A stretch of DNA of 64,000 nucleotides from Vitrella brassicaformis CCMP3155 (lineage: Eukaryota; Protista; Chromerida). The position numbers were made by a program, and so were the translations under genes. The stretch covers positions 124,001 to 188,000 of the forward strand of contig CDMY01000436.1 in assembly GCA_001179505.1 (NCBI GenBank), read 5' to 3'. Of this stretch, positions 20,371 through 59,168 are shown piece after piece (within the stretch, counting starts at the first letter, position 1; the number at the start of each line of letters is the position of its first letter). The notes beneath the pieces were generated by a model. The model was given only the letters and a program-made list of their open reading frames with translations. It had not been told where the DNA came from and searched no databases.

Positions 20371-21072
20371 AGGAGAAGCCAGTGACAAGCCTCAAGGACG
20401 GCGTGAGGGTGGCATGCACTGTTTCATTCCCACCCGTCAAGCCCAAGCTGCGAAAATCGACCGCGAAACGCCGACCCACGTTGACAGCAGGTACAGGAGT
20501 GGGCTGGATGTATGGCGAAGATCGGAGTGTTCTTGCTCTGTGGGTGTGTGTGTGTGTGTGTGTGGGTGTGGGTGTGGGTGTGGGTGTGTGCAGCGCTGCA
20601 GCGATTCTGATGGATACGCTAACCTGTCTCCGTGCCTGAGCAGACTTGTCCTCTCTTGCCTGAGTGAGACGACAGCAATATCAATGAGATGAATGACCAG
20701 CGAAGGTGCCGGCCAGTGCTGGGTACACACAGATCGATGAGATGTCAATCGATTCATTCACGATCATTCATTCAGAGGGATGCGTATAGATACGCGATAG
20801 ATAGATGCACAGATACATACAGATCCACATCCACCAATGTTCAGCAAGCAAGTGTTTGCGTCAGGGTCCCGTCCCCTCACGCAAGTCCTTCCTTCCTTAA
20901 CTATCCTCCAATCAGCCACCGACCCCACCCAGGCAGGCAGCCCAGCCAGTCCAAACAAACCCACCAACCACAATTAACCACGCACCCTGGCCACACACCA
21001 GATCAAATGAACCCTCACACACTCACACTCACACGCGGTGCAGCTGACTGACATGCCATGTGGATCCACTCA

Positions 21073-22241
21073 TCAGAAATGTACCGACGCGCGTCGGCTT
21101 TTGTTTTTCTCTGTCTCTTCTGCCTCGGCTGCCGCCTCCTCGATCCCACTGCCCCCCGCCACGCCCAGGCCGACCTTTTCTTGGCTGCCCGCCACGAGCC
21201 TGTCGCCCGACTTCTGCATGATGGCGTCCACCGATTGCCGCCGCACACGAGCCGCGCTGGTCTGGCCGTACTTTTGGCGTAGCGGCTTGGCCGAGGGCGT
21301 CTTGTTGTCTGTTCTGGTGTACTTCTGATGCTTGAAGCCCACCCATGAGGCGCCGTCGAGGAGGTTGTCGATCTCCTCCTCGATGGCCGCCTCGTCATAG
21401 CCGCTGTCCTTGACGCACCTGAAGAAATCTGTGAACTCATTGTGGGTGATCTAACACACACGCAAACACACACGCACACAGAAAGCCGCAAGAGTCAAGG
21501 CGAGGGGGATGGGGTCTTCCTGCCTCCCTGCCTGCCCGCCTGCCCGTGTGTCTCTGCCTGTGTGTGTGTGTGTGTGTGTGTTTGTGTGTCACCTGAGCGT
21601 CCCCGTTGACATCCATTTCGTCGAACAGGGCATGTGCATTCAGTCGGCTCCAACTCTTGAAGAAAGCCACAGCGTCATCTGCACAAAGACACACACACAC
21701 ATATCAACACACGCACCGAGACGACAGAGCCATCCATCCTTCCGTCCATGAATTCGCCGTCCCTCTCGCGTCCCCCNNNNNNNNNNNNNNNNNNNNNNNN
21801 NNNNNNNNNNNNNNNNNNNNNNNNNNNNNNNNNNNNNNNNNNNNNNNNNNNNNNNNNNNNNNNNNNNNNNNNNNNNNNNNNNNNNNNNNNNNNNNNNNNN
21901 NNNNNNNNNNNNNNNNNNNNNNNNNNNNNNNNNNNNNNNNNNNNNNNNNNNNNNNNNNNNNNNNNNNNNNNNNNNNNNNNNNNNNNNNNNNNNNNNNNNN
22001 NNNNNNNNNNNNNNNNNNNNNNNNNNNNNNNNNNNNNNNNNNNNNNNNNNNNNNNNNNNNNNNNNNNNNNNNNNNNCTCGCGTCCCCCCCCCCCTCCCCC
22101 GTCCCCCCAAATCTCACCGAAAGTGATTTTCCCCCTGTGCCTTGCGTCCAGCTGTTTCCACAGCTGCTGCAGCTTGCCCATACAGTCAGGCGACAGGCGC
22201 ACAGAGTGGAAGTTCTTGCCCTTGCCCAACCGGTTCCCCAT
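21073..22241 (-). CDS. EF-hand calcium-binding protein with possible N-myristoylation (MGN...)
   Basis: MGNRLGKGK...QLDARHRGKITF|DDAVAFF...FDEMDVNGDAQ|ITHNEFTDFF...GYDEAAIEEEIDNLLDGASWVGF; two EF-hand loops; the first intron spans the N gap. Confidence 0.8.
21777..22076. other. Assembly gap (300 N) inside an intron
   Basis: N run; ctcgcgtccccc is present on both flanks. Confidence 0.95.
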
Positions 22242-25800: not shown

Positions 25801-28800
25801 AGGACCACACACACGTGCGGGTGCCGCTGCAGCTGTGGGAGGAGTCGGTGGGAAGCGCGACGGAGCGGCTGGGGCCGGGGGAGCTTGGCCGCGAGATGAG
25901 TGGCATGGAGAGGCGACCTGTGGATGTGTGGGTGCACACTGGTGAGTGAGTGAGTGCACTGGTGAGTAGTGAGTGCACTGGTGGAGAGTGAGGGTGGATT
26001 GATATCAATGTGTGTGTGTTTGTCTTGTTGTTGTGTGCACTGCAGAGGAGGGTAAGGGTGTCGGTGGTGCTGTGAGCCACAGCGCCAGACACGTCGGCCG
26101 CATGGTCGACTTCGACTTCACTTACGAACCGCTGTGAGGGAGGGGAACAAAGAAAGTGCCACGAGCCTCCTCCGAGTGCGCACTCCACCGCTCGTTTGCT
26201 CTGTCTGTCTCTAGGTCCCTCACTGTCAGCAATCCCTACGCAAGCCACGACATCGCTCTCTATGAAGGTAAGCCAGCCATCCAGCACACAACATGCAAAC
26301 CTCCTTCTGTCTGTCTCTACAACGAATTCCCAGACGGTTCAGCGCACGAAGACCCCATCTTCTTCGACGTGCTGCTCACATACTCGCCCGAGAGTGTGCA
26401 GGGCAGCCCACACCCACTGCTGCCTGACTTCGACGTCAACCCCAAGAGGTACCGACCGCTCTCGTCGCCCCCCGCTCGGCCGACCAAGGAGGAGCAGACA
26501 AACCTCATCACACAGACGCGGGTGTACCTGTGGAACCGGAACTACGAGGCAATGGCCGACTGGTCAGTCAGCTCACCAAAGCGGCAAGACGTCAGTCATT
26601 TCCATCAAATGTTTGCACCCTATATGCAGCTTTCTGGTGTGGGGCGACGGAATGAACACATCCGTCAGCCCGACTGTGTATGAGGAGCAGACGATCTACC
26701 TCTCCGTCCGCGGCGTCGACCTCACCCTGCAGCCGCCAGACCCACACGACAACACCACCAACGTGACTCTCGCACTCAGCCGCACCGGCTACCACACCCC
26801 GGCTGACCTGACTGATGTGTGGGGCGACATTGATCCGCCCAACAACACGGTGCTGCTCGAGGACTGCGGGCAATGGCGGGCGGGCGTCGCGCCGGGGCCT
26901 AATGCGAGATGCAGGGTGGGCAAAGACACAGACAGAGAGGCGGGGGGCGATGTGTCGATTATATGGTGGTGTGGTTGTGGGTGTGGTTGTGGTTGTGGTT
27001 GTGGTTGTGTTTAGGAGACAGTGGTTGTGTCGTATCGGCCGGACTCGGTTGCTGGAGGCATCAGCTACCTGGGAAACGCCACAGAGTGAGTGAATAGCAA
27101 GCGGGAGCGATCTCCGCTTCACGCATTCCATCACGGCCCCATCTGACTGACGGGCCTGTGTGTCGTTGGTGTATCACCATGCCATGCAGGGCAGTGTACG
27201 TCGGCAACGGCACCTACCGCGCCTTCTACCTGCCAACCGTAGCCGGTCGGTCAGCCACACACCCACACCCACACACCACACCCAGAGGCTCCTCAGCCCC
27301 CTGTGTCAGCTTCTGCCGTGTGCATGTGTCACATACATCCAGGTGGCTATTCCGTGTTGGTGGAGAAGGGCATCCCCGGTGTATACGGCGAGTACTTCCT
27401 CTCCGACGCCGTCAAGCGGGACTCTGCCCCGGCCATCCCCGAGATCCGCCGCATCGACCGGCAGCTGACGGGCAGATGGCCCACCCGCGGCCGCGCACCC
27501 GCACTCATCCGGTGGCGGGGCTTCCTGCGCCTTTTCAGGGACCTGCACATGAACGGCAACGGCACCTCCCCATGGTCGGTCGCCATTCACGTGACCGCAG
27601 GCTGCCGGGCGTCCCTCTACTGGGGTCTTCGGCGGGACCTCGCCCTGGACCTGATCGCCCCCATTGACTTGGACGAGGAGGCTACGGCGAATATGACGGT
27701 CACGAGCACGGGGGTGCCGATTGTGGTGAATGCGAGTGTTGGTGTTGGTGACGGTGGTGCTGAGGGTGACGGTGGGGGTGAGGGTGTAGTTGTCGGTGAG
27801 GGTCGGCTGGATGTGCCGGTTGACATGGCTGAGGGCGGGGAGGACGCCCCGCCTGCAGTGCCGTTTGAGCTGGAGTTCTTCGCGCCGGACCCGTGGCCTT
27901 ACAAGGAGTTCACCGACATTGCGGTGGATGTGTTGTGGCACACGCCCAACATGAGTGCGGGCGAGTTTGTGAGGATACCGCAGGACGCCATTCTCACGCG
28001 CGGCATTCACTTCAAAGGTACACACACACATCCATTTGATCACACACCTAACCTAACCGCCGTCTGTCCGTCTGTCTGTCTGTGTGTCCTTGTTGCTGTG
28101 TGTTCTTCAGGCAGCCCGTTCATGGGGTTTGAGGCGTTGGCTGGCGATGCCAACGCCACCATGTCATCCGCCTACAACGCTGACGACGGATCAGAAGTGT
28201 TCGACACATCCGTCGGCACCGAATACAGGGTGGGTGGGGTCAGTGAGCGGCTGAGTGGGTACACATCACGGACATCACGGCCTGCCTGTCTGCCTTGGTT
28301 GATGTGGTGATGGTGTGTATGTGTGTGGATGTCAGGTGGACATCTTTCTCTTCGACAGCAGCGGTTTCCGCATCGTCAGCCCCAACTACCTCGGGTCGAT
28401 CGTCGTCCAACTCAAGGGACCTTCCGCTGCCGTCGAAGCAACCGGTCACCCCCTCCCTCTCCCCCCCCCCCCCCNNNNNNNNNNNNNNNNNNNNNNNNNN
28501 NNNNNNNNNNNNNNNNNNNNNNNNNNNNNNNNNNNNNNNNNNNNNNNNNNNNNNNNNNNNNNNNNNNNNNNNNNNNNNNNNNNNNNNNNNNNNNNNNNNN
28601 NNNNNNNNNNNNNNNNNNNNNNNNNNNNNNNNNNNNNNNNNNNNNNNNNNNNNNNNNNNNNNNNNNNNNNNNNNNNNNNNNNNNNNNNNNNNNNNNNNNN
28701 NNNNNNNNNNNNNNNNNNNNNNNNNNNNNNNNNNNNNNNNNNNNNNNNNNNNNNNNNNNNNNNNNNNNNNNNNNCTCCCCCCCCCCCCCCTTTCACACAC

Positions 28801-31800
28801 CACACACCCACATTCTCCCTCTGTGTGTGTGTGTGTGTGTGCGCGTCCACAGGTGCGGTGTCTTACAACGCCACAACGGGTGTGTACCGCGGCGCCTTCA
28901 CCCCCACGTCGACATCGATCAGTGTGTCGGGCTATGACCGCGAACTGCACGTGCTGCTGGGGCCAGACCCGTGCGCCAACTCCCCGTTGGCCGTGACGGT
29001 GAGGAGTCAGCTGTCGGACCCCAACCAGACCATCATGTACGACCATGAGGATGACTCACCCGCATTCGTCAATGAGGTCGGTGGGCAGGGAGAGAGGGAG
29101 AGGGAGGGAGGTAGGGAGAGGGAGAGACCGTCTCTCCCTTGTGTGTATGGGTGTTTGGCGGCTGTGTTTGTTGTCAGGGTAAGGAGTTCAAGTTGCAGTC
29201 GGTCGATGCGGCCGGGAACAATCGGACGGTGGGTGGGGATCTCTACGAGGTCCGATTCGAAGGACCGCAGCACGCACCCAGACCACAAACAGGTAAATAA
29301 CGACCGACCCACCCACACGCATCCATCCACCCACCTACACAAATCGCTTCTGTCCGTCCGTGTGCAGGTTGGTTCGGAGGCCCGTGCACCGACAACAGTG
29401 ACGGCACCTACACATGCGAGTTCGCCATCGTGACCCCCGGCATCTACCAGCAGCACGTCTACTACTTCTCCACAGAGATCCTCCGGCCGCCCTTCAACCG
29501 CACCATCACAGCCCAGGGCGTCATCTCACCCGAGCAGACCTACGCCACGGGGCCTGGTGTAACGGCCGCACCTGTCGACCCGGCCGACATCATCAAGGCT
29601 GGCGTGCCCACCACTTTTACCATCGTCACGGCGGATCCTTTTGGGATTCAGTACTTCGAGGGCGGCATGACGTTTGTGGTCACCATTGACGTCAATGTGA
29701 GTTGTGACATGGCTGGCCATGGGTGCACAACAGGATCCTCGATGGATGGATGGATGGACATGGATGTGTGTGTGTGACAGCCCCCCTTTCAGGTGACGCC
29801 CGTGGACAACAACGACGGCACCTACAATGTGACCTACACCATCTGCCCCGCCGGACCAACTCTCATCTACATACAAGTGATGTGACCCCCTCCACCTCCC
29901 CCCTCACACAGCACACACACCCCACACCCCACGCCCCTCCGTGTGTGTGTGCGTGTGTCTGATTCATCCCATCCACCTGAATCAGTTGAACTGCAAGATT
30001 CGCGAGTTCCAGTTCAACGAGGTGTGCGAGGCCTTCCCCTCCAACACCACCTCAACCCCGGTGCCCATCTCCGGCTCCCCCTACCCCATCACTGTCGTGC
30101 CCTACCTCGAGGACCCCGCTCAGTCGGCCATTCAGGGCCATGCACTCGTCGACCCGAGAGCCGGCGTGCCGCAAGAGTTCCAAGTAGGTGGTGTGGTGGT
30201 AGAGGAGAATATATAAGGGGGAAATCGGCATCGCATCATCAGTGTCATCTATTGTCTCCTCCTGGTCTCTCTCTCTTTGTGTCTGTTGTGTTGTGTTGTG
30301 TGTGTGCAGGTGGCCTTTGAGGACAGCTGCGGCAACATCCCTGTGGACTTCAACCGCTCCGAGTGGAGCCTCACCCTCACGGAGGACCTGACGGCCTCTC
30401 TCGTGCCCCTCTCGTGGGCCCTCGCCTCTCCCGGCCTCATCGAGGCGTCATTCACCCCCCTTCGCAGCGGCGCCTACACCCTGTCCGTCATCCTCGACAA
30501 TACCGGCACCCCAGCACACATCTCCAACTCACCCGCCACTCTCACCGTCACACAGTCGGCCGTCGTGGTGGGCACTGACTTCGTTATCGGCTCCTTCGGC
30601 GCGTCCGAGCAGTCCCTCCGAGGGCCTCTGAGTGTTAGCACAATGGACGCCGGGCAGTCGGCGACCTTCCAGGTTACGGCGCGGGACATGTACGCGGACG
30701 CTTTGCCGTTTGACAACGACACGTTTCGGGTGGGTGTGTGGGAGGGGGGCGACTGCCCGGCGAGCGTGGGGTGTGTGGGGCTGTCGGCCAAGGCCGCCAG
30801 CTGCGCCCTGCATGGTCAGAACTGCGTCGTGCGGTCCACTGACAACCTGTGTGTGCCCAGCCCGACCAATTGCCAGAGCAAGCCAGCAGTAAGCGAGCGC
30901 CAAAAGACATGCGACAAGAATCCCGCCCGCCACTCTGCCGTGTTTGTGTTTGTGTTTGTGTGTCAGGTAGTGACGTCATCGATGGCAATCGGCTTGACGG
31001 TGGTGTCGCCTGGTGTTTACGAGTACACCCTGAGCACCGCCCGCAGCGGCACCCACTACGGCGGTGTGTCTGTCTACCGCCTCGGTGGCGTGCAGGCGGC
31101 CTACTTCCGCGACCCCAGCTTCCAGTCCCCACCCCTCCACACACACATCGACAGACGATTCGACTACAACTGGTCAGTCATTCCAACCAGTGCACACAAA
31201 CAAGCAGAAACGTTGTGCATGTGTGTGTGTGTGTGTGGATGTGTGTGTTGATTGCAATGTGCACTGCTGCAGGTGGGATGTGTCGGCGTCTGCCGCTGTG
31301 TCTGGCAGCGCGAGCCTTCACGAGTTCGCTGTGCGGTGGGTGGGGCTCATCCGGCCGCCCGCGGGCACACCCGAGATGGTCCGCGCACTGCCCACTGAGA
31401 CGTACAACCTCACCATCGTCACCGATGGAGGTCGGTGCACCTCACCCACACAACAAACACACAACACAGACGAGTGCGTCGTACGTGTGTGTCCACTCCT
31501 CCCTCCTCTCTGAGTGTGCTGTGTCTGTAGGTGTGCGTCTGTACCTGGATGAGTCCCTCGTTCTCGACTGCTGGCGGTGCGGCATGTCCGAGCCCGACCG
31601 CACAGGCTGCCCACCGGCGTGTGCCGACGGCAGCACAGAGGGCGGTGAGAGCCGCAAGGGTGTGCGCGGTGTGGAGCTGCCCGTGGCAGGTTTCACCTGG
31701 TACCGTCTCGAGTACTTCCACCGCGGCCGGCTGTCGGCCTACCTGCGCATGTACTGGACCTCACTCACGCAGCGGCAAGAGGTGCTGGTGCCCTCGTCTG

Positions 31801-48578: not shown

Positions 48579-50089
48579 CTATCGCCCTCGGGCGAACGAC
48601 CGACAGCCACAATCCCACTCAATCACGCCTCCCCGGCCAGTCGACAGTGCTGCGACAGGCGACGCGACTGCTCGACATGGGGGAGATGCCCTCTGCCCCC
48701 TCTCTAGGCTCTCGGGCCCAGTTCTAGGCTTCTCTGCGCCTGGCTGACGGACGGCACTGCAGGCCGCAGAAGGCTGAACGTCATGCCGAGACTCTGCTGC
48801 AAAATGCGGAGCGACATCCTCAGGTCTTGCTGCAAACGACACGCAGAGAAGCAGGACCTCGTGAGTCAGTCGATGCTGTATGTGTAGTTTTCGTGAGTCA
48901 GTCAGTACCAGCCATGCCCCTCTCTTTGATGGTATGCGGACAATGATGGGCTTTTTCATCACCAGGCCCATCCACCCAAACACGCGAACCACATCGGTGT
49001 CCTCAGGCGCCACATTCAACACCGCTCCACCGTAACCGATGAACTCCAGCGACTCAGCAGCAGCGTGGTCGAGGGCGGGTGAGTATCTCGCCCTGATGGC
49101 CGCGCGGAAACTCTGAACGTCCTCCACGCCCTTCAGGCGGACAAACTTGGGATTGTGCCCGTACTCCAGAGCAACCCACAGCCCCCTTGGCCCTTCCTTC
49201 TCCTGCTGCTGGGGGCGGGTGAGAACATTCCTCTGTGTCCTGCGGGGCGGCGGCGCTATGGGAACACTCAACTGGACGAGTTGAGCGCCGGGATGGGAGG
49301 GGCTGGTCGCTGTCGCTTGCGGGTCAAACCGCTGCACATTCGCGATAAAACATCTGGCACTGGTGCGGCTGATACCCTGCTGCACCAGGTCACACACGGT
49401 GAGTGTTCTAAACGCGTCCCATGATGTGATCCGGAGCGCCAAGACCCCCTCTCGGAACTCGTCAGCCTGTGGATTCGACCGCAGCACGTGATCCACAGCC
49501 ACCAGGAAGGAGGTGTCACTGTTGAGGTGACAAAGGCAAACACACCACACCACACCCCGGAAAGTCGCACAGTGAGTGAAGACAGACACCGTGTCTGTCG
49601 CTCTCCTTGCCTTCCCTCCCTTTGACTGACCTGAGAGGATCCAGGAAACTCAGTGCGTAGACAACGGCTTTCGCAACACCCAGAGGAACACCAGCAGCGA
49701 CAAAGTCCTCAGCGCTGACCCGTCTGAAGTCGCTCCACGACTTGATGACAGCGGTGAACTGCTCACGATGAGCATGGAAGCTGGCGTAGGATGGATCAGC
49801 GAGAACCCGGTCAAGGGCAATATCAAACCGTGTCGAGGCCTCCTCCAAAGACAGATCTTCGTAAATCGTGTCATCAGGAACAATTGCAAGACGGGAGGAA
49901 GGTGACAGCGTCCATCCACCCGCAAACAGGGAGATGAGGAGGGCTGCGATCTAGCGAGAACCCGTTTCACGGAGCCCGACCCCATTGGTTCGGTTTCACG
50001 TACGCTCTAATCCCGCCCGCACGTTTGGGGTGTCTGACAGCACACTTACCCCAATGCCAACAGTTCTCGTCTTTCGGTTCACGTGTCAT
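48579..50089 (-). CDS. Hypothetical protein with two SAM-like helical domains and a ubiquitin-like (Crinkler-header-like) domain; ends uncertain
   Basis: SWSDFRRVSAEDFVAAGVPLGVAKAVV and TSWDAFRTLTVCDLVQQGISRTSARCFI (tandem SAM-like, joined by an in-frame intron); LWVALEYGHNPKFVRLKGVEDVQSFRAAIRARYSPALDHAAAESLEF...PIIVRIP. Upstream exon joined via a GTAAGT donor near 50050. Confidence 0.6.
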
Positions 50090-50509
50090 GAGGGCAGCAC
50101 ATGGTGACAGGTCCATGGTATGATGTCCCCGTTGCCATCGCCTTGCCCAGTGACACGCTCCCCGAAAGCCGAGAAGCAGGACGCATCGCAGCGAAACCCA
50201 GGTCACACACATGAAACTGTTTTAGTTAACGACTGTGTGTAGATCCACACAGACTGACTTGTGCGTGGCAAAACCGACAGCTAGCGCAGCGGACAGATGC
50301 GCGTGGATGGAGTGAGTGGGAACCGCGTGACTGTGATGGCGAAACCGACAGAAAAGAAAAAGATAGAGCCCGTGAGTGACTGAGTGACTGAGTGAGGGAG
50401 CACACAGACTGTTGCTCGTGGTTTCGCCCGCAACACAGTGCCCTCAAAGAAAGTCAGAACGCAGAGAGGGAGACGATCGCGAGAAAGCTTGCCTGTCTGC
50501 CCTTCCCAA

Positions 50510-50809
50510 NNNNNNNNNNNNNNNNNNNNNNNNNNNNNNNNNNNNNNNNNNNNNNNNNNNNNNNNNNNNNNNNNNNNNNNNNNNNNNNNNNNNNNNNNNN
50601 NNNNNNNNNNNNNNNNNNNNNNNNNNNNNNNNNNNNNNNNNNNNNNNNNNNNNNNNNNNNNNNNNNNNNNNNNNNNNNNNNNNNNNNNNNNNNNNNNNNN
50701 NNNNNNNNNNNNNNNNNNNNNNNNNNNNNNNNNNNNNNNNNNNNNNNNNNNNNNNNNNNNNNNNNNNNNNNNNNNNNNNNNNNNNNNNNNNNNNNNNNNN
50801 NNNNNNNNN
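50510..50809. other. Assembly gap (300 N), intergenic
   Basis: N run. Confidence 0.95.
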
Positions 50810-51185
50810 CTCTCCGCTGCTTGCCCTTCCTCTCTCCCCACGCCAGCCAGCCAGTCCGTCCGTCCGTCCGTCAGTCCGGTCGGTCGACGCACACAAAATC
50901 GGTTCTGACGTGACGTGACGTGAGTGACACCACAAGCAGCCGGCCACTCGAGTGCAGTCAGTCGTCCCATCCTTGGCAAGGCACACATCCATGCCACCCC
51001 ACCCCACCCCACCCAATCACTTCTGCATATTCAGTCAGTCGATCCAGCCAGCCAGCCACCCACCCAGCCATTCATTGATTGCAACACAGACGGAAGATAG
51101 ATATGTAGGAGGCTCTCCAAAACTTAGAGTGCGGCGGTGCCTCGCCCGAATAGGGCGACAGCCAGCCAGCCATTCAATTCAATGC

Positions 51186-51245
51186 TCGCACACACACGCA
51201 CACACACACACACGCATACACATACACATACACATACACACAGAC
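51186..51245. repeat. (CA)n/(CATACA)n microsatellite
   Basis: cacacacgcacacacacacacacgcatacacatacacatacacatacaca; one example of the simple repeats found in most introns and spacers. Confidence 0.85.
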
Positions 51246-52151
51246 AGAAACGTATAGACACCCAACAACAGGCACACCACACGGACAGAGACATCGACAT
51301 GCACACGCACACCAACAGACACCCATCGATCTATATAGCTTCCCTCCCTCAATCGACTGACTCGACGCCCCTCCCCTCTTCTCCTAGCTCTCTCTCAGCT
51401 TTGTCGTGCATTCTACCGAGTAAGGCAAGGCAGGCCATCTGGGTGGGGTGGGTGGTTGTGATGATGTGCAGGCAAAACCGAAAAAGAGCTCCATTCCGAG
51501 CACGGCCATGCTTGTGAGGCAGCCTTAAACCAGGGAAGCAACAAAGGCGAGGTCACGGCGAGAGGTAATAGAGAGGGAAGGAGGGGGGAGAGGGAGAGAG
51601 GGAACTGACTGGGTGACTGACTGGGCAAGCCGGGCAAGGAAGAGAAGACAGAGGCAGGCAGGCAGGCAGCCAGACAGATCAGGAGAGAGAGAGAGAGAGT
51701 TGAGAGAGCGGCAGGCAACACAGCCGTGCTAGGAAGGGCAAAATAGCGAGGGCTAATGTGCTGACTGACTCTATGTCTGTCTCTGGCTGGTTGTCGCTTG
51801 CTGCGTACGTGAGGAGTCCCAGGGGAAGATTCACAGGGCAGAGCTGCTAGTCCTTAGCAGTGCTACCCTGTCAACCAGCCGCAGGCGCCCCTCCCACACG
51901 GAGCACACCAGCAGCAGCCCGATCCGATACAGACAGACCATTGCAAGCACTATGTCCAAGGGAGAGACGACATACACATCCCTCCCCTACCCTGCCCCCC
52001 TGCCCTGCCCATCTCTATGCAACTATCATTGCCAAAACCCAACGACACAGCTCTAGAGGACGCAATCAGTAGCTAGTCACTCAACCATGCCATCCATCCG
52101 CCCGCCCGCCCGCTCGTTGGTCTGTCTAGTGGCGTCGTGGTGGTGGTGGTG

Positions 52152-52947: not shown

Positions 52948-53637
52948 ACTGATGTCTAGCGAGAGGCACTTCGAGAGGAAATCAGTGAGGTGATGTCCGA
53001 GGACGGCTGGCTAAGCAGCGGCTTAGTGTCAAGACCCTAACGCCTTCGTGAAACGCTTCGCCTCTGCCGATCCCGAGACACAGAGCTGTTTCCCGAGTTT
53101 TGGAGTTCTCTCTGGTCCTGCTGAGTGGCGAGCGGCTGTGATCTGCCTTCTGGGCGAAAAGCCATTCGACAAGCGGCTGATTTTCGGTGAGCGGCGTGAG
53201 TCGTCGAGGCAAGAGAGTCTTTCACTCGATAGGCACACGACACACAAGATGTCCACCCTATGGAAGCTCACGCAGATGTGCTGCGACATTGCCGGCAACA
53301 CTACCCGTAAGACACACACTCGGCGGCCTGCAAGGCTGTGCTGCTGGGCTGAGCTGGTCTGCGCTGGCTGACGCCCGGCCGAGGGACTGCTGGGCTGGGC
53401 GAGCGAGGCAGCGGGTGTGCCGTCCACCTGTAGCTAGATCCGTAGCCTCTGGCAGGGTGAAAGTGTAGCGCATCTGACAGCCGCATCGCATCGCTGGGAG
53501 CAACCTGACTGACCTGCAGACAGACAGGCAGGAGGGCAGGAGGCGGTGGACGTGTGTGTCCGTGGTGCCATTGTGTCTGGTGTGGTGTCTGGATGTGTGT
53601 CTGTGGGTCTCTGTGTGTGTGTGTGTGTGCAGCAACC

Positions 53638-56600
53638 ATGAACGGGCAACACATGAACGAGGAGGTAGCCAACAGCAAGGTCGCTCTCGAGGACGGTGCA
53701 ATATGTGCATGTGTGTGTGTCTATGTGTGTGCCTCCAGGTGGTGCGAGAGATGCGTCGCCAGACGTTCCGCGACTGTCGTGCGGTGAGGCCAACACACAC
53801 AAATTGATTGACACAGCTCATGTGACGGAGACGAGAGGGTGGGGGGGCTGGTGTGTCTGTCAATCCACTGTGTGTGCAGGAGTTGGCCAAGCTGATCAAC
53901 GAGACGAACTGCCACCCCATAATGGTGCGGCTGGCCTGGCATGACGCCGGCACATACGACTGCAAGACAGCCGTAAGACGCAGACACCGCACACTCGCGC
54001 TCGCTGACACAAGCCAGCAAGCCACAGACATTCTGTATGTGTGATGTGTGATGTGTGTCGGTTGCAGGTGGGCGGTGCGAACGGTTCCATTCGTTTCGAG
54101 CCCGAGATCAACCACGGTGCTAATGCGGGTCTCAAAAAGGGACTGGAGCTGCTGCAGCTCATCAAGGACAAATTCCTCGACGTGTCGTGGGCCGACCTCA
54201 TCCAAATGGCCAGCGCCACAGCCATCGAACTCGCGGGCGGCCCACGCATCCCTATGAAGTGAGCAAGGCAACCACCTCACCACCTCACCACCGCACCCAT
54301 GTGATTGATGTGTGTTCTGCACTGCACACCCTCCCTCCCTCCCTCGCGTGTCGTCTTATGTTATGTGTGTGTAAAGGTATGGGCGATTGGACGTGTTTGG
54401 CGGGGCCGACTGCCCGCCTGAGGGCAACCTGCCTGCCGGCGGTGCTCCGTGGCCCGCGGGCGCAGACGGCCCTCAGAAACACATCCGGGACATATTCTAT
54501 CGGTGAGGGAGGGAGGGCAGGGGAGGGGAGGGGAGTGGAGGGGCAGAGAGAGATCACAGAGAGAATGAGCTGCTGGATGGGAACGGGATGTGTGTGAATA
54601 TGTTTCATCAGCATGGGATTCGGTGACAAGGAGATCGTGGCCCTGTCGGGAGCGCACACACTGGGCCGCGCTCGAACGGTATACACACAAACACAACACA
54701 CACAAAGGTCGGATGACCGACCGGTATGTGAAAGTGTATGTCCTTCTCTCTCTCTCGTGTCCTGGCACGGCGCACACAACAGGATCGCAGTGGGTTTGGT
54801 GCTGGCGACGAGGGTTCCAAGTACACGGCGGGCGACGTCAAGCCACGGGGCGACGGACAGGAGGGATACGGTAGGCACATAGACACGACACACACGTGCA
54901 GAGGGAGAGTGAGTAACATCGAGACCTACCTTTCATTTGTATGGTGTGTGTCAGGCAATCCCGGCGGCAAGTCGTGGACCCCCAACTGGCTCAAGTTCGA
55001 CAACTCGTAAGCCATAAGGGAGAGAGAGCATACACACACACTTGCTTTGCTTGTGCACGCACTGCACGGAGCTGTGTGTCCCCGGGTGGGATGGGGTGAT
55101 GCAGGTACTTCACGGTGCTGAAGGACAAGATGAACGGCGACCTGCTCGCACTCGACACCGACAAGTGCCTCTTCGAAGGTGATCTGATCAGATCTGACAA
55201 CACTCACACACATATGCCAGCCGCAACACCGATGCATCCATATTTCTTTCCCTGTCAGATGCTGCCTTCAAGCCCTTCGCCGAGAAGTACGCCGCCGACG
55301 AGTCGGCATTCTTCAAAGACTACGCCATGGTCTGTTTGTCAGTGAGTCCAGCCTGCACAAGACAAGACACGCGTCCATCCCACTCTGACTGACTGACCGG
55401 TCTGTCCTTTCCTGTGCACACGCGTGTGTCAGGCCCACAAGGCGTTGAGTGAGTTGGGCAGCAAGTGGGAGCCTGCGGACGGCATGTACATCGACCCACC
55501 AACCGTCGAACGGCTCCAGGAGTGCCAGGAGGTCACACACACACACACACACACAGGAGGCACACGAGCGGCATTCAGCCTTTCCTTGCCTTGCGCATCA
55601 CTGCCGTCGCCGCGCATCCATCGTGTCGTGTTTGTCGTGTGTGCATTGCAGGTGTTGAAGAAGATGGTCGACGAGGTGAACTGCCACCCCATCCTCATCC
55701 GGCTGGCCTGGCACGACTCGGGCACGTATGACGCCAAGATGCCGGTACCTACCTGTCCTGTCACACACACGATAGACATGCACACCTGCACCCTCTCTCC
55801 TCCCCGCCCGCCACTCACTAACAATCAGATGACCGATTGGCCCAACTGCGGCGGTGCCAACGGGTCGATCCGTTTCGAGCCGGAGATCAACCACGGTGCC
55901 AACGCGGGTCTGCAGAACGCCCTGAACCTGCTGAAGCCCATCAAGGCGTCCTTCCCCGAGATCAGCTGGGCCGACCTCATGCAGATGGCCAGCGCCACAG
56001 CCATCGAGGTGGCCGGCGGCCCCAAGATTCCCATGCGGTCAGTGCAGTGGGAGGGCAGCCAGCGATGGGGGAGTGAGTGATCTGTATGTGCGTCGTTCGT
56101 GTGACGTGATGAATCAATGGGGTTGTGCAGTTATGGTCGTTTGGATGCGTGGGCTCCGAAGAACTGTCCGAAGGAGGGCAACCTGCCGGCCGGTGGGGCC
56201 CCCTGGCCGGGCAGTGCCAGCACGCCCCAGCAGCACCTGCGGGACGTCTTCCACCGCATGGGCCTCTCCGACAAGGACATCGTGGCGCTCTCGGGCGCGC
56301 ACACACTGGGACGCGCCTACAAGGTCAGAGGGAGGGAGGGAGGGAGAGAGGGAGGGAGGAGAATGGTGTGGTGTGTGGTGTGCAGTTCCGCAGTGGGTTT
56401 GGTTTGGACGAGAAGGGTTGCAAGTACACGACCGGCAAGTGCCTCGTGCGCAAGGATGGCAAGGAGGGACATGGTAAGGTCTACCGCACGCACGGCACAG
56501 CACAGCACAGCACAAGCAGGTCTGTCTGTCTCCCTTGCCCATCCGACTCTGTCTGTCGTTGTGTGCGTCTGGCTGACCAGGCCAGACGGACGGCGGTCAG

Positions 56601-58756
56601 TCCTGGACCCCCAAGTGGCTCTCCTTCGACAACTCGTAAGCACACACAGCGGCATCGCACAGGGCCCACACAAGACCGACACGTCAGTCACCTTTTGCGC
56701 GCGCACACACGCTGTTCGTTCTTGTCAGCTACTTCACCTACTGCAAGCAGAAGGGCGGCGAGGACCTGCTCTCACTCGACACCGACCAGTGCCTCTTCGA
56801 AGGTCAGTCAGTCAAACCACTCAGCAACTCACATGACATGCAGTCAGGCAGGCACCCTGCTATGTGTCCCTCCCCCCCTCCCTCCCTCCCTCCCTCCCCG
56901 TCCGTGTGTCAGATGCGGCCTTCAAGCCCTTTGCCGAGAAGTACGCCACCGACGAGTCGGCATTCTTCAAAGACTACGCCCAGTCGCACCACCTGCTGAG
57001 CGAGCTGGGCAGCAAGTTCTACCCCGCCGAGGGCATCGCCATCGACCCCCCCACCCCCGAACGACTCCGCCAGTGCAAAGAGGTGAGCACGATGGATGGC
57101 GGGGATGGTCTGGTCGCTTACGTGTCTGTCGAGCGGAGCTCTCATTTATGCGCATCTGTGTTTTTGTGGCTGCGCTGCGTGTGTCTTGTCTGCAGGCGCT
57201 GAGCAAGTTGATTGACGAGAAGAACTGCCACCCCATCATGGTGCGCCTGGGCTGGCATGACGCAGGCACATTCACCAAGGCCATCGGCGTACGCTACGCA
57301 CAGCATACACAACACAACCAACACCCCCACCCCAAAGACGCGAGCGACTCACTCATCTTGTCTTGTCTGTTGGGTGACTGTTGCCCCCCCTTGCACTGCA
57401 GATCGAGCACTGGCCTCGCTGCGGCGGTGCGAACGGGTCGATCCGTTTCGAGCCCGAGATCGCCCACGGCTGCAACGCCGGTCTGGCCAAGGCTCTGGAG
57501 CTGCTGCAGCCCATCAAGAAGGAGTTCTTCGACGTGTCCTGGGCGGACCTCATGCAGATGGCCAGCGCCACAGCCATCGAACTCGCGGGCGGCCCCAAGA
57601 TACCGATGAAGTGAGACAGACGAGGACGTTCCGCCCTCATCTGTGTGTATGTGTGTGTGTGTGTACATGTGTGTGTCAGGTATGGGCGCATCGATGCCGT
57701 GTCTGGCCGCGACTGCACCCCTGAGGGCACGTTGCCTGCCGGCGGAGCCCCCTGGCCTGGCAAGGCCAAGTCGGCTCCGGAACATCTGCGGGACATCTTC
57801 TATCGGTGAGTGAGGCAGGCAAAGAGATATTAGACAGACAGATCCTGCCTGTCCGTGTGCCATCCATCCATCCATCAGCATGGGTTTGGGCGACAAGGAG
57901 ATCGTAGCACTCTCCGGCGCACACACGATCGGACGCGCTCGAACGGTACGTGAAGTGAAGTCCATGCAGACCGGACCAGCCGAACACACACATGGCGTGT
58001 GTGGGTGTGGGTGTGGTGTGGTGTGGGTATGTGCAGGATCGCAGTGGGTTTGGTGCTGGGGACGAGTGCACCAAGTTCACCAAGGGCGGCGCCAAGCCAC
58101 GGGGCGACGGCAAACCCGGCATGGGTCAGCTCAGTCACAGCACAACAGAATAACATTATGGGGCAGGCAGCCGCCAATGTGTCTGTCGCATGTGCTGTGC
58201 TGCATGTGTGTGTGTGCGCCGCGTCGGTCAGGTCACGCTGGCGGTCAGTCCTGGACCGAGAAATGGCTGGCCTTCGACAACTCGTAAGATTCATGACAGA
58301 CAGACCACGTGTGACCATCGTGAGTGTGGTGTATGTTGGTCCACCCGTGTCATGGGTGCCTGCAGGTATTTTAAGGTAGTCAAGGACAAGGTCGACGGCG
58401 ACCTGCTCGCACTCGACACCGACAAGTGCCTTTTCGAGGGTCAGTTACGCCAGCCAAATCACATACAGAATCTCGCTCCTGTCAATGAATGCCATCCTCT
58501 CCTCCGTGGCTGGATGTGATGTGTGGTCAGATGCCGCATTCAAGCCCTTCGCCGAGAAATACGCCGCGTCACAGGATGACTTCTTCAAAGACTACGCCAT
58601 GGTCAGTGAGGCACAGCACCCCACACACCACACCACACACGCTCATCTATCATATCGGCACGTACGTGTCCCTGTCCGTCTGTCTGTCAGGCGCACAAGG
58701 CGTTGAGCGAGTTGGGGTCCAAATTCATCCCCGCCGAGGGCATCAGCATCGCGTAG
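53638..58756 (+). CDS. APX: Triple-domain ascorbate peroxidase (three tandem class I heme peroxidase domains in one reading frame)
   Basis: Three copies of NCHP...RL(A/G)[36 protein letters not shown]..(D/F)[36 protein letters not shown]; domains joined in frame through IDPPT.ERL..C.E|; a single stop at 58754-58756. Confidence 0.92.
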
Positions 58757-59168
58757 ACAGATAGACCATACACACACCGACACAGACAAGACAAGACAGA
58801 GGGGAGAGGGGGAGGCGACAGACAAACACACACGAACGTACACACGTGGTAGAGAAAGACTGACTGCTTTAGTTGGACGCCGGACAGGTCAGGTCACTCG
58901 CTGCCTGGCTGGCATCTCTGTCGTGTTTACAGCATACATACATAATCACATCACATCACATGGTGCATGTATGGCGATTTTGCCGATCGATCTCTTGTTG
59001 GTTTGGTCCTTTTGGGGTGGTTTGGTTTTGCCGGCCTGCGTCAAAGGGGAGGGAGGGAGGGAGGGCAAGGGAGCCGGGAGGGACCAGACCACGCAAGGAA
59101 GAGTCTTTTTGAGGCGGCGAGTTTTGCCTGTCTGTCCGTCCATCCGTCGGCCCATCCGTTCGTGTGCC

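What the first reader, a model, noticed from the sequence alone, without database searches (positions are those of the whole stretch)
53638..58756. One gene, three complete ascorbate peroxidases in tandem
Seen: three full APX domains are spliced into one frame with no internal stop. The linkers ...[28 protein letters not shown]|[13 protein letters not shown] and ...[28 protein letters not shown]|[13 protein letters not shown] join the C-terminus of one domain straight to the first helix of the next. Each domain keeps the distal Arg/Trp/His (RLxWH), the proximal His (GAHT), the proximal Trp (SWT), the Asp (LDTD) and the ascorbate-binding Arg (RSG). Established: APX is normally a single-domain enzyme, and KatG has two domains with the second inactive. 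Inference: this is a three-heme enzyme, either a covalent trimer or a polyprotein like dinoflagellate luciferase or Rubisco polyproteins. I know of no description of such an enzyme, but could not search.
Basis: partly seen in the sequence, partly recalled or inferred. Interest (0 to 1): 0.85.

Follow-up and report, generated by a model that had tools for sequence, protein, structure and literature searches.

The report
Three-domain ascorbate peroxidase gene in Vitrella
This alga (Vitrella brassicaformis) has one spliced gene that strings three complete copies of the hydrogen-peroxide-removing enzyme ascorbate peroxidase into a single protein, one more copy than the two-copy enzyme known from Euglena; the protein is already in public databases, but I found no paper on it.

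Summary
Window 53249-58756 (+) holds one gene of 28 exons. It encodes three collinear, complete chloroplast-type ascorbate peroxidase (APX) units with no internal stop.

Spliced RNA contigs from three runs remove GT..AG introns that a DNA run keeps. One 399-nt contig directly joins unit 2 to unit 3 (intron 57083-57195). Another 399-nt contig has exactly the length expected if the unit 1-2 intron (55532-55651) is spliced out.

My 886-aa model equals residues 22-907 of the public Vitrella brassicaformis protein CEM12648.1 / A0A0G4FGS3 ("unnamed protein product"). All seven key haem and ascorbate residues are intact in each unit. dN/dS between units is 0.27-0.44, and intron positions and phases are identical. 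The three units are each other's closest relatives, so the duplication happened in this lineage.

There is no signal peptide, and the units abut through a roughly 15-residue tail. The best reading is an unprocessed, probably cytosolic, three-haem enzyme of about 100 kDa.

Novelty is limited:
- Euglena's two-domain APX was characterised in 2010.
- Databases hold other independently duplicated two-domain proteins and a few three-domain ones (e.g. Nolandella).
- I found no paper describing a three-domain APX.

The parts
53249..53306 (+). Exon 1 of the public gene model (start codon 53249; 19 codons + 1 nt), followed by intron 53307-53632
   Evidence: Located by matching the first 15 residues of P0159 in the window. 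GT donor at 53307, acceptor CAG ending 53632. Not covered by the laid stretch. Indirect RNA support only: the spliced contig breaks exactly at 53633.
53633..53783 (+). Exons 2 and 3 (53633-53664, 53739-53783) with intron 53665-53738.
   Evidence: Frame and GT..AG sites. The left block of joint 53782->53879 is only 46 nt, so an intron ends at 53738. Identical to P0159.
53880..55531 (+). APX unit 1 (P0159 residues 46-332): 9 exons 53880-53972, 54068-54258, 54377-54502, 54612-54678, 54783-54870, 54955-55006, 55105-55178, 55259-55329, 55433-55531
   Evidence: Profile hits collinear over h1-293. Four introns shown as RNA joints, the others by frame, GT..AG and identity to P0159. All 7 key residues present.
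55532..55651 (+). Junction intron 1 (120 nt, GT..AG, phase 0; in-frame and stop-free if retained)
   Evidence: Sequence. The 399-nt RNA contig (same depth as joints 55328->55432 and 55743->55828) spans 55297-56002, which is 706 nt in the DNA contig; 706 - 103 - 120 - 84 = 399. The joint itself is among the '5 more not shown'.
55652..57082 (+). APX unit 2 (P0159 residues 333-626): 7 exons 55652-55744, 55829-56037, 56131-56323, 56386-56473, 56581-56635, 56729-56802, 56913-57082. It lacks two introns that units 1 and 3 have
   Evidence: 335 bits to tobacco chloroplast APX 1IYN over its whole length.
57083..57195 (+). Junction intron 2 (113 nt, GT..AG, phase 0)
   Evidence: Directly shown: RNA contigs in X1, X2 and X8 join 57080->57194. 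X2 record 11 lies on 56951-57080 | 57194-57288 | 57402-57575. DNA run X3 keeps the intron (record 19, 56951-57575 unbroken).
57196..58756 (+). APX unit 3 (P0159 residues 627-907): 9 exons 57196-57288, 57402-57610, 57680-57805, 57879-57945, 58037-58124, 58232-58283, 58366-58439, 58531-58601, 58691-58756; stop TAG 58754-58756
   Evidence: Seven introns shown as RNA joints.. AF2 pLDDT mostly above 90 for this unit.
58757..59000 (+). 3' untranslated region (at least to the end of the laid stretch)
   Evidence: RNA contigs run unbroken 58690-59000 in X1, X2 and X8.

Best explanation
This is a single nuclear gene of Vitrella brassicaformis (window 53249-58756, + strand, 28 exons). It is transcribed and spliced into one mRNA whose 907-codon frame encodes three complete chloroplast-type ascorbate peroxidase units placed head to tail.

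Origin. The gene arose by tandem segmental duplication inside the gene. The breakpoints lay in the first coding exons and in the last exon just before the stop, so the C-terminal tail of one unit was fused in frame to the N-terminal helix segment of the next. The old first intron became the 'junction' intron. This happened twice in the Vitrella lineage.

Inferred function. The product stays in one piece as a probably cytosolic enzyme of about 100 kDa. It would carry three haem b groups and three ascorbate sites, each unit reducing H2O2 with ascorbate in the standard APX cycle (compound I formed with the distal Arg/Trp/His; proximal His-Asp-Trp). The units would be tethered by a flexible tail of about 15 residues. 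This would be a three-unit counterpart of the Euglena 'intramolecular dimer' APX. The likely benefit is more catalytic sites per transcript and/or stabilisation by built-in oligomerisation.

Shown: gene structure, splicing across both junctions, an uninterrupted frame, intact catalytic motifs, purifying selection on each unit, and lineage-specific duplication.

Inferred: haem occupancy, activity of each unit, absence of proteolytic processing, and cytosolic location.
For: - RNA runs X1, X2 and X8 show 15 listed GT..AG intron joints that DNA run X3 lacks, including the unit 2-3 junction. The unit 1-2 junction follows from contig-length arithmetic.
- The spliced CDS has no internal stop and equals residues 22-907 of public protein CEM12648.1 / A0A0G4FGS3.
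- Pfam finds three PF00141 stretches, 480 bits in total.
- The best solved relative is tobacco chloroplast APX 1IYN, 335 bits, full length, including the chloroplast-type loop and the KF.P.EG tail.
- All seven key residues are present in all three units.
- dN/dS is 0.27-0.44 for all unit pairs.
- Intron positions and phases are identical in the three units, and the junction introns sit at the same alignment column as intron 53784-53879.
- The three units form one clade (support 100/98) that excludes the single-domain Vitrella paralog P0305 and all sampled APXs.
- The N-terminus has no hydrophobic signal-peptide core; the maximum 11-residue Kyte-Doolittle mean is 0.59.
- AF2 places the 'linker' residues ERL..C.E inside helix A of the next unit (helices 324-341 and 618-635). 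Only residues 310-318 and 606-612 are low-confidence coil.
- In Euglena's two-domain enzyme both domains bind haem and are active (PMC4232752, citing Ishikawa 2010).
Against: - No protein-level data exist. Haem content, activity and product size are untested.
- Contigs do not show one molecule spanning all 28 exons, and transcript ends cannot be seen in contigs.
- The unit 1-2 joint is inferred from lengths, not listed.
- Exon 1 (53249-53306) was outside the laid stretch, so the true N-terminus, and hence the location, rests on the public annotation.
- AF2 pTM is only 0.51, so no defined arrangement of the units is supported.
- dN/dS of 0.27-0.44 is rather high for a core enzyme. Unit 2 is the most diverged and could have a modified role.
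Confidence: 0.7

Rival explanations
1. Polyprotein. The 907-aa precursor is cut in the tails between units to release three separate APX monomers of about 32 kDa, as with Euglena or dinoflagellate plastid polyproteins.
For: The two junction tails are conserved with each other (..IDPPT.ERL..C.E). They include a low-confidence coil of about 9-15 residues that a protease could reach. Polyproteins are known in algae with complex plastids (own knowledge).
Against: There is no signal or transit peptide, whereas known algal polyproteins are plastid-targeted. Most of the 'linker' is predicted to be the start of helix A of the next unit, and the same segment precedes unit 1, so it looks structural rather than a spacer. 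The only characterised multi-domain APX (Euglena) is reported as an intact two-domain enzyme (PMC4232752, PMC7237987). In all other multi-domain relatives the units abut without a spacer.
Confidence: 0.15
2. Only one or two units are catalytic. The others serve as a structural scaffold or regulator, like the haem-free C-terminal domain of KatG, or unit 2 has a changed substrate or a redox-switch role.
For: Unit 2 is the most diverged: 66-69 % identity, the longest branch, the highest dN/dS (0.38-0.44), and two extra Cys residues in its chloroplast-type loop.
Against: All seven haem and ascorbate residues are kept in every unit and dN/dS is below 1 for each pair. KatG's second domain has lost its haem ligands (PMC4232752), which is not the case here.
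Confidence: 0.1
3. Three adjacent but separate APX genes or transcripts, merged by gene prediction.
For: Plant two-domain and three-domain 'APX' models in databases (Fragaria, Malus, Mucuna) probably are such merged tandem genes.
Against: Spliced RNA contigs cross both junctions using GT..AG introns of 120 and 113 nt. Units 1 and 2 have no stop codon. Unit 3 has no start codon before its first helix, and there is no intergenic space.
Confidence: 0.03

Closest known systems
Euglena gracilis ascorbate peroxidase (Q8LP26, 649 aa; Ishikawa et al. 2010 Biochem J 426:125, cited in PMC4232752 and PMC7237987)
   Same: Class I haem peroxidase units duplicated head to tail in one polypeptide with no spacer. 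Every unit keeps the haem ligands. Reported to bind haem and be active in both domains ('intramolecular dimer').
   Different: It has two units, not three. It belongs to the hybrid APX-CcP clade, and its duplication is old and shared with several environmental sequences, independent of Vitrella's. It has an N-terminal presequence of about 138 residues, which the Vitrella protein lacks.
Tobacco chloroplast (stromal) APX, PDB 1IYN
   Same: Closest solved structure: 335 bits over the whole unit. It shares the WP..GGANGS segment, the chloroplast-type loop before QSWT and the KF.P.EG C-terminal tail.
   Different: It is a single-domain plastid protein. The Vitrella loop is 14-15 residues longer, and the protein has three units and no targeting peptide.
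Catalase-peroxidase KatG
   Same: Same superfamily (PF00141); arose by tandem duplication with the copies left fused.
   Different: KatG has two domains and the C-terminal one has no haem (PMC4232752). Here all copies keep the catalytic residues, and the best PDB matches are APX, not KatG.
Nolandella sp. AFSM9 transcript ORF EP01128_P004712 (882 aa; database entry only)
   Same: Three PF00141 units in one ORF, each with RLAWH, SGAHT.G, GPWT and LPSD motifs.
   Different: About 34 % identical. It is cytosolic or hybrid type and an independent triplication in an amoebozoan. It comes from a transcriptome assembly only and is uncharacterised.
Dinoflagellate luciferase (three catalytic domains in one chain); Euglena/dinoflagellate plastid polyproteins
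   Same: Repeated complete catalytic units encoded in one frame (own knowledge; analogy only).
   Different: These are unrelated folds. Polyproteins are plastid-targeted and cleaved, and neither feature is seen here.

Membership tests
Class I haem peroxidase / ascorbate peroxidase (chloroplast-type clade) | Match to PF00141 above the gathering score, once per unit | tested here: met
   Three stretches, 480 bits against a cut-off of 27. Single exons score 50-57 bits.
Class I haem peroxidase / ascorbate peroxidase (chloroplast-type clade) | Distal Arg-Trp-His and proximal His-Trp-Asp residues | tested here: met
   R W H / H W D present in units 1, 2 and 3.
Class I haem peroxidase / ascorbate peroxidase (chloroplast-type clade) | Ascorbate-binding Arg (pea Arg172 equivalent, RSGF motif) | tested here: met
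   (D/F)RSGFG in all three units.
Class I haem peroxidase / ascorbate peroxidase (chloroplast-type clade) | Chloroplast-type loop and C-terminal KF.P.EG tail; groups with plastid-type APXs | tested here: met
   Full-length alignment to 1IYN. Sits within the clade of plastid-type APXs of algae with red-derived plastids, support 96/92.
Class I haem peroxidase / ascorbate peroxidase (chloroplast-type clade) | Ascorbate-dependent H2O2 reduction, haem b bound | not testable with these tools
   Needs enzyme assays and haem quantification.
Euglena-type multi-domain ('intramolecular oligomer') APX | Two or more peroxidase units in one translated polypeptide, supported by mRNA | tested here: met
   Spliced contigs across both junctions; uninterrupted frame.
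Euglena-type multi-domain ('intramolecular oligomer') APX | Common descent with the Euglena two-domain gene (same duplication) | tested here: not met
   The Vitrella units form their own clade far from the Euglena d1 and d2 clades. This is a convergent architecture.
Euglena-type multi-domain ('intramolecular oligomer') APX | Mature protein unprocessed, every unit haem-loaded and active | not testable with these tools
   Needs a western blot or MS and biochemistry.
KatG (catalase-peroxidase) | Two domains with a haem-free C-terminal domain | tested here: not met
   All units keep the haem ligands. In the PDB search all 60 listed matches are ascorbate or cytochrome c peroxidases and none is a KatG.
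Plastid-targeted polyprotein (Euglena/dinoflagellate type) | N-terminal signal plus transit peptide | tested here: not met
   No hydrophobic core in the first 45 residues of P0159. Caveat: the 5' exon rests on the public annotation.
Plastid-targeted polyprotein (Euglena/dinoflagellate type) | Conserved cleavable spacer between units; monomers in vivo | tested here: inconclusive
   The junction peptides are conserved but are mostly tail plus helix A. Cleavage cannot be tested here.

The most novel reading that the evidence does not exclude
The three covalently linked, haem-competent units form a functional assembly with properties that a monomer or dimer lacks. Examples would be cooperativity or protection from the H2O2 inactivation typical of chloroplast-type APXs, with the diverged middle unit (extra Cys pair in its loop) acting as a redox-sensing regulator. 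More broadly, tandem multiplication of class I peroxidase domains would be a recurrent, convergent protist strategy, with at least 7 independent events in the tree, that has gone unrecognised beyond Euglena.
Probability: 0.15. Interest if true: 0.6.

Novelty: new variant of a known kind. Interest (0 to 1): 0.42.

Why it matters
A 2014 review still called Euglena's two-domain enzyme unique (PMC4232752). A transcribed three-domain APX with every active site intact, plus independent two-domain and three-domain cases in an unnamed NCBI assembly (GCA_014466275.1), a chytrid, an amoebozoan and several environmental or metatranscriptome sequences, shows that in-frame multiplication of this enzyme is recurrent. 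It gives a natural system for asking what covalent oligomerisation does for a labile haem enzyme: stability, dosage per transcript or cooperativity. It is also a very clean example of how an intragenic tandem duplication with exon breakpoints turns an existing intron into a domain-joining intron. It does not open a new field. The gene model is already public, and the chemistry expected is ordinary APX chemistry.

Tried and rejected
- An exhaustive HMMER search of the 50 % representative library with one exon did not return the Vitrella protein itself. It was found only later through a length-matched query, the dinoflagellate fusion P0155.
- The AF2 model of the 907-aa public protein gave good unit folds, but pTM was 0.51. 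Most single-domain alignment rows stacked on unit 3. No conclusion about a compact pseudo-trimer could be drawn, so I did not run fold searches.
- I looked for a mosaic or gene-conversion pattern that would explain why the non-adjacent units 1 and 3 are sisters. Shared-residue sites are spread evenly, so there is no mosaic. A simple unequal crossover does not predict this order, and it stays unexplained; A-B-A-B followed by loss, or faster evolution of unit 2, are possible.
- The loose-end sequence of an abundant RNA contig at 53400-53536 was not found anywhere in the window.
- Four literature searches found no description of a three-domain APX. Schott 2019 (PMC6642578) treats Vitrella APX as an ordinary monofunctional enzyme.
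- Galdieria phlegrea P0263 (three PF00141 units) turned out to be a different peroxidase type (RGAFH / SGAHSVG). The plant two-domain and three-domain models look like merged tandem genes.
- The joined spliced model was never sent to a search or fold tool. It was built from window coordinates inside scripts only and compared locally, and the identical public protein P0159 was used instead. Only one read-laying run of 5601 letters was available, so exon 1 and the five joints not shown could not be inspected.
Full report
**What is in the sequence**

Six-frame translation of 53400-59000 shows, on the + strand only, three collinear series of short open segments. Together they spell a complete ascorbate peroxidase three times. 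A profile built from the three units hits 27 exon-sized pieces in strict order h1->h293, three times over, with per-exon E-values from 8e-06 down to 7e-44. It hits nothing else in the 64-kb window above noise. Individual exons match Pfam PF00141 at 50-57 bits. This is far beyond chance.

**Gene model**

I used the GT..AG joints seen in RNA contigs, reading-frame continuity and paralogy between the units to derive 27 exons from ATG 53638 to TAG 58754-58756. That gives 2661 nt and 886 codons with no internal stop.

This model is identical, residue for residue, to positions 22-907 of a public protein found later: P0159 = CEM12648.1 = UniProt A0A0G4FGS3 = EukProt EP00390_P012057, Vitrella brassicaformis CCMP3155, "unnamed protein product". 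The public model adds one upstream exon (53249-53306, then intron 53307-53632). This fits my independent observation that the spliced RNA contig breaks exactly at an acceptor at 53633.

The full coding exon list is:
- N-terminal exons: 53249-53306, 53633-53664, 53739-53783.
- Unit 1: 53880-53972, 54068-54258, 54377-54502, 54612-54678, 54783-54870, 54955-55006, 55105-55178, 55259-55329, 55433-55531.
- Unit 2: 55652-55744, 55829-56037, 56131-56323, 56386-56473, 56581-56635, 56729-56802, 56913-57082.
- Unit 3: 57196-57288, 57402-57610, 57680-57805, 57879-57945, 58037-58124, 58232-58283, 58366-58439, 58531-58601, 58691-58756.

All 27 introns (62-326 nt) are GT..AG.

**Is it one transcript?**

I laid four public runs on 53400-59000. 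Runs X1, X2 and X8 come from two studies under three organism labels. Their record calls them RNA only as a guess. However, their contigs skip 15 listed GT..AG introns, while run X3 carries the same region unspliced. So they are cDNA-derived, and X3 is the genomic control.

The unit 2-3 junction is shown directly. One 399-nt contig lies on 56951-57080 | 57194-57288 | 57402-57575 in all three RNA runs, whereas X3 has 56951-57575 unbroken.

The unit 1-2 joint was among "5 more not shown", but it follows from arithmetic. The RNA contig that carries joints 55328->55432 and 55743->55828 has the same depth values as record 3. It is 399 nt long and ends at 56002. The DNA contig over the same span (55297-56002) is 706 nt, and 706 - 103 - 84 = 519, so a further 120 nt must be missing. 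The block to the left of 55743 is only 94 nt, so it starts at the acceptor at 55652. The missing piece is therefore exactly intron 55532-55651.

Units 1 and 2 end without a stop. Unit 3 begins without a start codon. The "intergenic" spaces are introns of 120 and 113 nt. Three separate genes can be set aside.

Contigs cannot prove that a single molecule carries all 28 exons, and they cannot show transcript ends.

**Are the three units functional-looking?**

- Unit 2 aligns over its full length with tobacco chloroplast APX 1IYN (335 bits). The alignment includes the WP..GGANGS segment, the chloroplast-type loop before QSWT and the KF.P.EG tail. Cytosolic APXs and cytochrome c peroxidases score much lower.
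- In a profile alignment, all three units keep the distal Arg, Trp and His, the proximal His, Trp and Asp, and the ascorbate-binding Arg.
- Pairwise identity is 69 % (units 1-2), 75 % (1-3) and 66 % (2-3).
- Nei-Gojobori dN/dS is 0.38, 0.27 and 0.44, with dS about 0.65-0.69. Each copy has therefore been under purifying, if somewhat relaxed, selection since the duplications.

**How it arose**

Intron positions and phases fall on identical alignment columns in the three units. Unit 2 has simply lost two of the nine.

The two junction introns are phase 0. They sit at the same column as intron 53784-53879, which precedes unit 1.

The peptide just before each of these three introns is homologous..F-R-D-C-R-A before unit 1, and ..L-Q-E-C-Q-E and ..L-R-Q-C-K-E at the junctions.

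This is the signature of an intragenic tandem duplication. Its breakpoints lay in the N-terminal exon and in the last exon just upstream of the stop. The result was a fused exon (tail of unit n plus the start of helix A of unit n+1), followed by the pre-existing intron.

Phylogenies give the three units as one clade (SH-aLRT 99 in the quick tree; 100/98 in the careful tree). Units 1 and 3 are sisters (95; 100/95). The clade excludes the single-domain Vitrella paralog P0305 (59 % identical) and every other sampled APX; the closest are at most 64 % identical and include several stramenopile sequences. The duplications are therefore specific to this lineage.

Why the non-adjacent units are sisters is not explained. 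No mosaic pattern was seen.

**How it most likely works**

The N-terminus has no hydrophobic signal-peptide core. The protein therefore lacks the bipartite leader that, to my knowledge, nuclear-encoded proteins need to enter a complex plastid. Cytosolic location is the default inference.

AF2 on the public protein gave mean pLDDT 77 and pTM 0.51. It folds each unit as the usual helical peroxidase. It puts the "linker" residues ERL..C.E into helix A of the next unit (helices 324-341 and 618-635; the same helix, 29-54, precedes unit 1). Only residues 310-318 and 606-612 remain as low-confidence coil.

So the units are joined by the natural chloroplast-APX tail of about 15 residues, not by a dedicated spacer. 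The relative arrangement of the units is unresolved.

[quoted passage not shown] By analogy, I take the Vitrella product to be an unprocessed three-haem APX of about 100 kDa (confidence about 0.7).

The alternatives are:
- a processed polyprotein (0.15);
- a protein in which some units are non-catalytic or re-purposed, unit 2 being the candidate (0.1);
- separate genes (0.03).

**Comparison with what is known, and novelty**

The gene model has been public since the genome release, with automatic domain annotation only.

Searches of about 8.4 million papers found no description of a three-domain APX. A paper that modelled a Vitrella APX treats Vitrella APX as an ordinary monofunctional enzyme (PMC6642578). 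The 2014 superfamily review calls the Euglena two-domain enzyme unique (PMC4232752).

Database searches show otherwise. Two-domain proteins with intact sites occur in:
- a close environmental relative (P0211, 589 aa);
- an NCBI assembly (P0026, GCA_014466275.1; locus L001);
- the Euglena clade, with several metatranscriptome members;
- a chytrid (KAJ3100579.1);
- Symbiodinium "APX3".

Three-domain proteins occur in Nolandella sp. (882 aa, all sites intact) and inside a 2731-aa Prymnesium parvum fusion (sites degenerate).

In the tree each of these is an independent internal duplication.

The Vitrella enzyme is therefore a new variant (three active-looking units, chloroplast-type clade, RNA-supported) of a known kind, the tandem multi-domain APX. 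I score interest at 0.42. It is a tidy, testable case that corrects the view that the Euglena enzyme is unique, but it is not a new principle.

**Limits and omitted steps**

- The joined spliced model was used only inside scripts. All external searches and the fold used exon references or the public protein P0159.
- Exon 1 and transcript ends were not tested with reads.

Noticed in passing
proteins P0160-P0183, e.g. P0168 1329 aa, P0162 Protoceratium, P0178 Symbiodinium natans 'nasB': Many dinoflagellates encode one ORF joining enolase (PF03952/PF00113), a NasB-like flavoprotein reductase (PF07992/PF00070, BFD-like 2Fe-2S PF04324, PF18267) and a C-terminal APX. Shorter forms lack the enolase. 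The reductase-APX pairing suggests a self-regenerating ascorbate or electron-supply module.
   Followed up: no
proteins P0202-P0207, P0203, P0264: Urate oxidase (PF01014) fused to an APX domain in many environmental sequences (one cluster has 87 members). An H2O2-producing enzyme is joined to an H2O2-removing one.
   Followed up: no
P0001 (Prymnesium parvum KAL1499200.1, 2731 aa), P0120/P0153, P0235: Giant haptophyte proteins combine a multicopper-oxidase domain, cytochrome b561, two or three peroxidase-like units with degenerate catalytic residues, and DOMON domains. This resembles the peroxidase-DOMON-b561 chain noted elsewhere in this genome (s1-226928).
   Followed up: partly
P0189, Nolandella sp. 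AFSM9 (EP01128_P004712), 882 aa: An amoebozoan transcript ORF with three class I peroxidase units, each with intact RLAWH / SGAHT.G / GPWT / LPSD motifs. It is an independent triplication.
   Followed up: partly
window 55532-55651: The 120-nt junction intron between units 1 and 2 is in frame and free of stops. Retention would give a protein with a 40-residue longer linker instead of a truncated one. The second junction intron (113 nt) would shift the frame.
   Followed up: no
window 53400-53536 (inside intron 53307-53632 of the APX gene): RNA contigs lie here at 5-10 times the depth of the APX exons in X1, X2 and X8. They run on at 53536 into sequence that is not in the window. This could be a repeat or part of another transcript; it is unexplained.
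   Followed up: partly
window 21001-22000, 28001-29000, 50001-51000: Three 1-kb bins have G+C of 0.40-0.46 against about 0.59 elsewhere. A CA-repeat array lies at 51189-51261.
   Followed up: no
L001 5566-7503 (NCBI GCA_014466275.1, JACKZZ010009896.1): A two-domain APX in a gene-dense, intron-poor eukaryotic contig was called as two genes (118 aa + 500 aa) with a 78-nt gap between them. The organism was not identified here.
   Followed up: no
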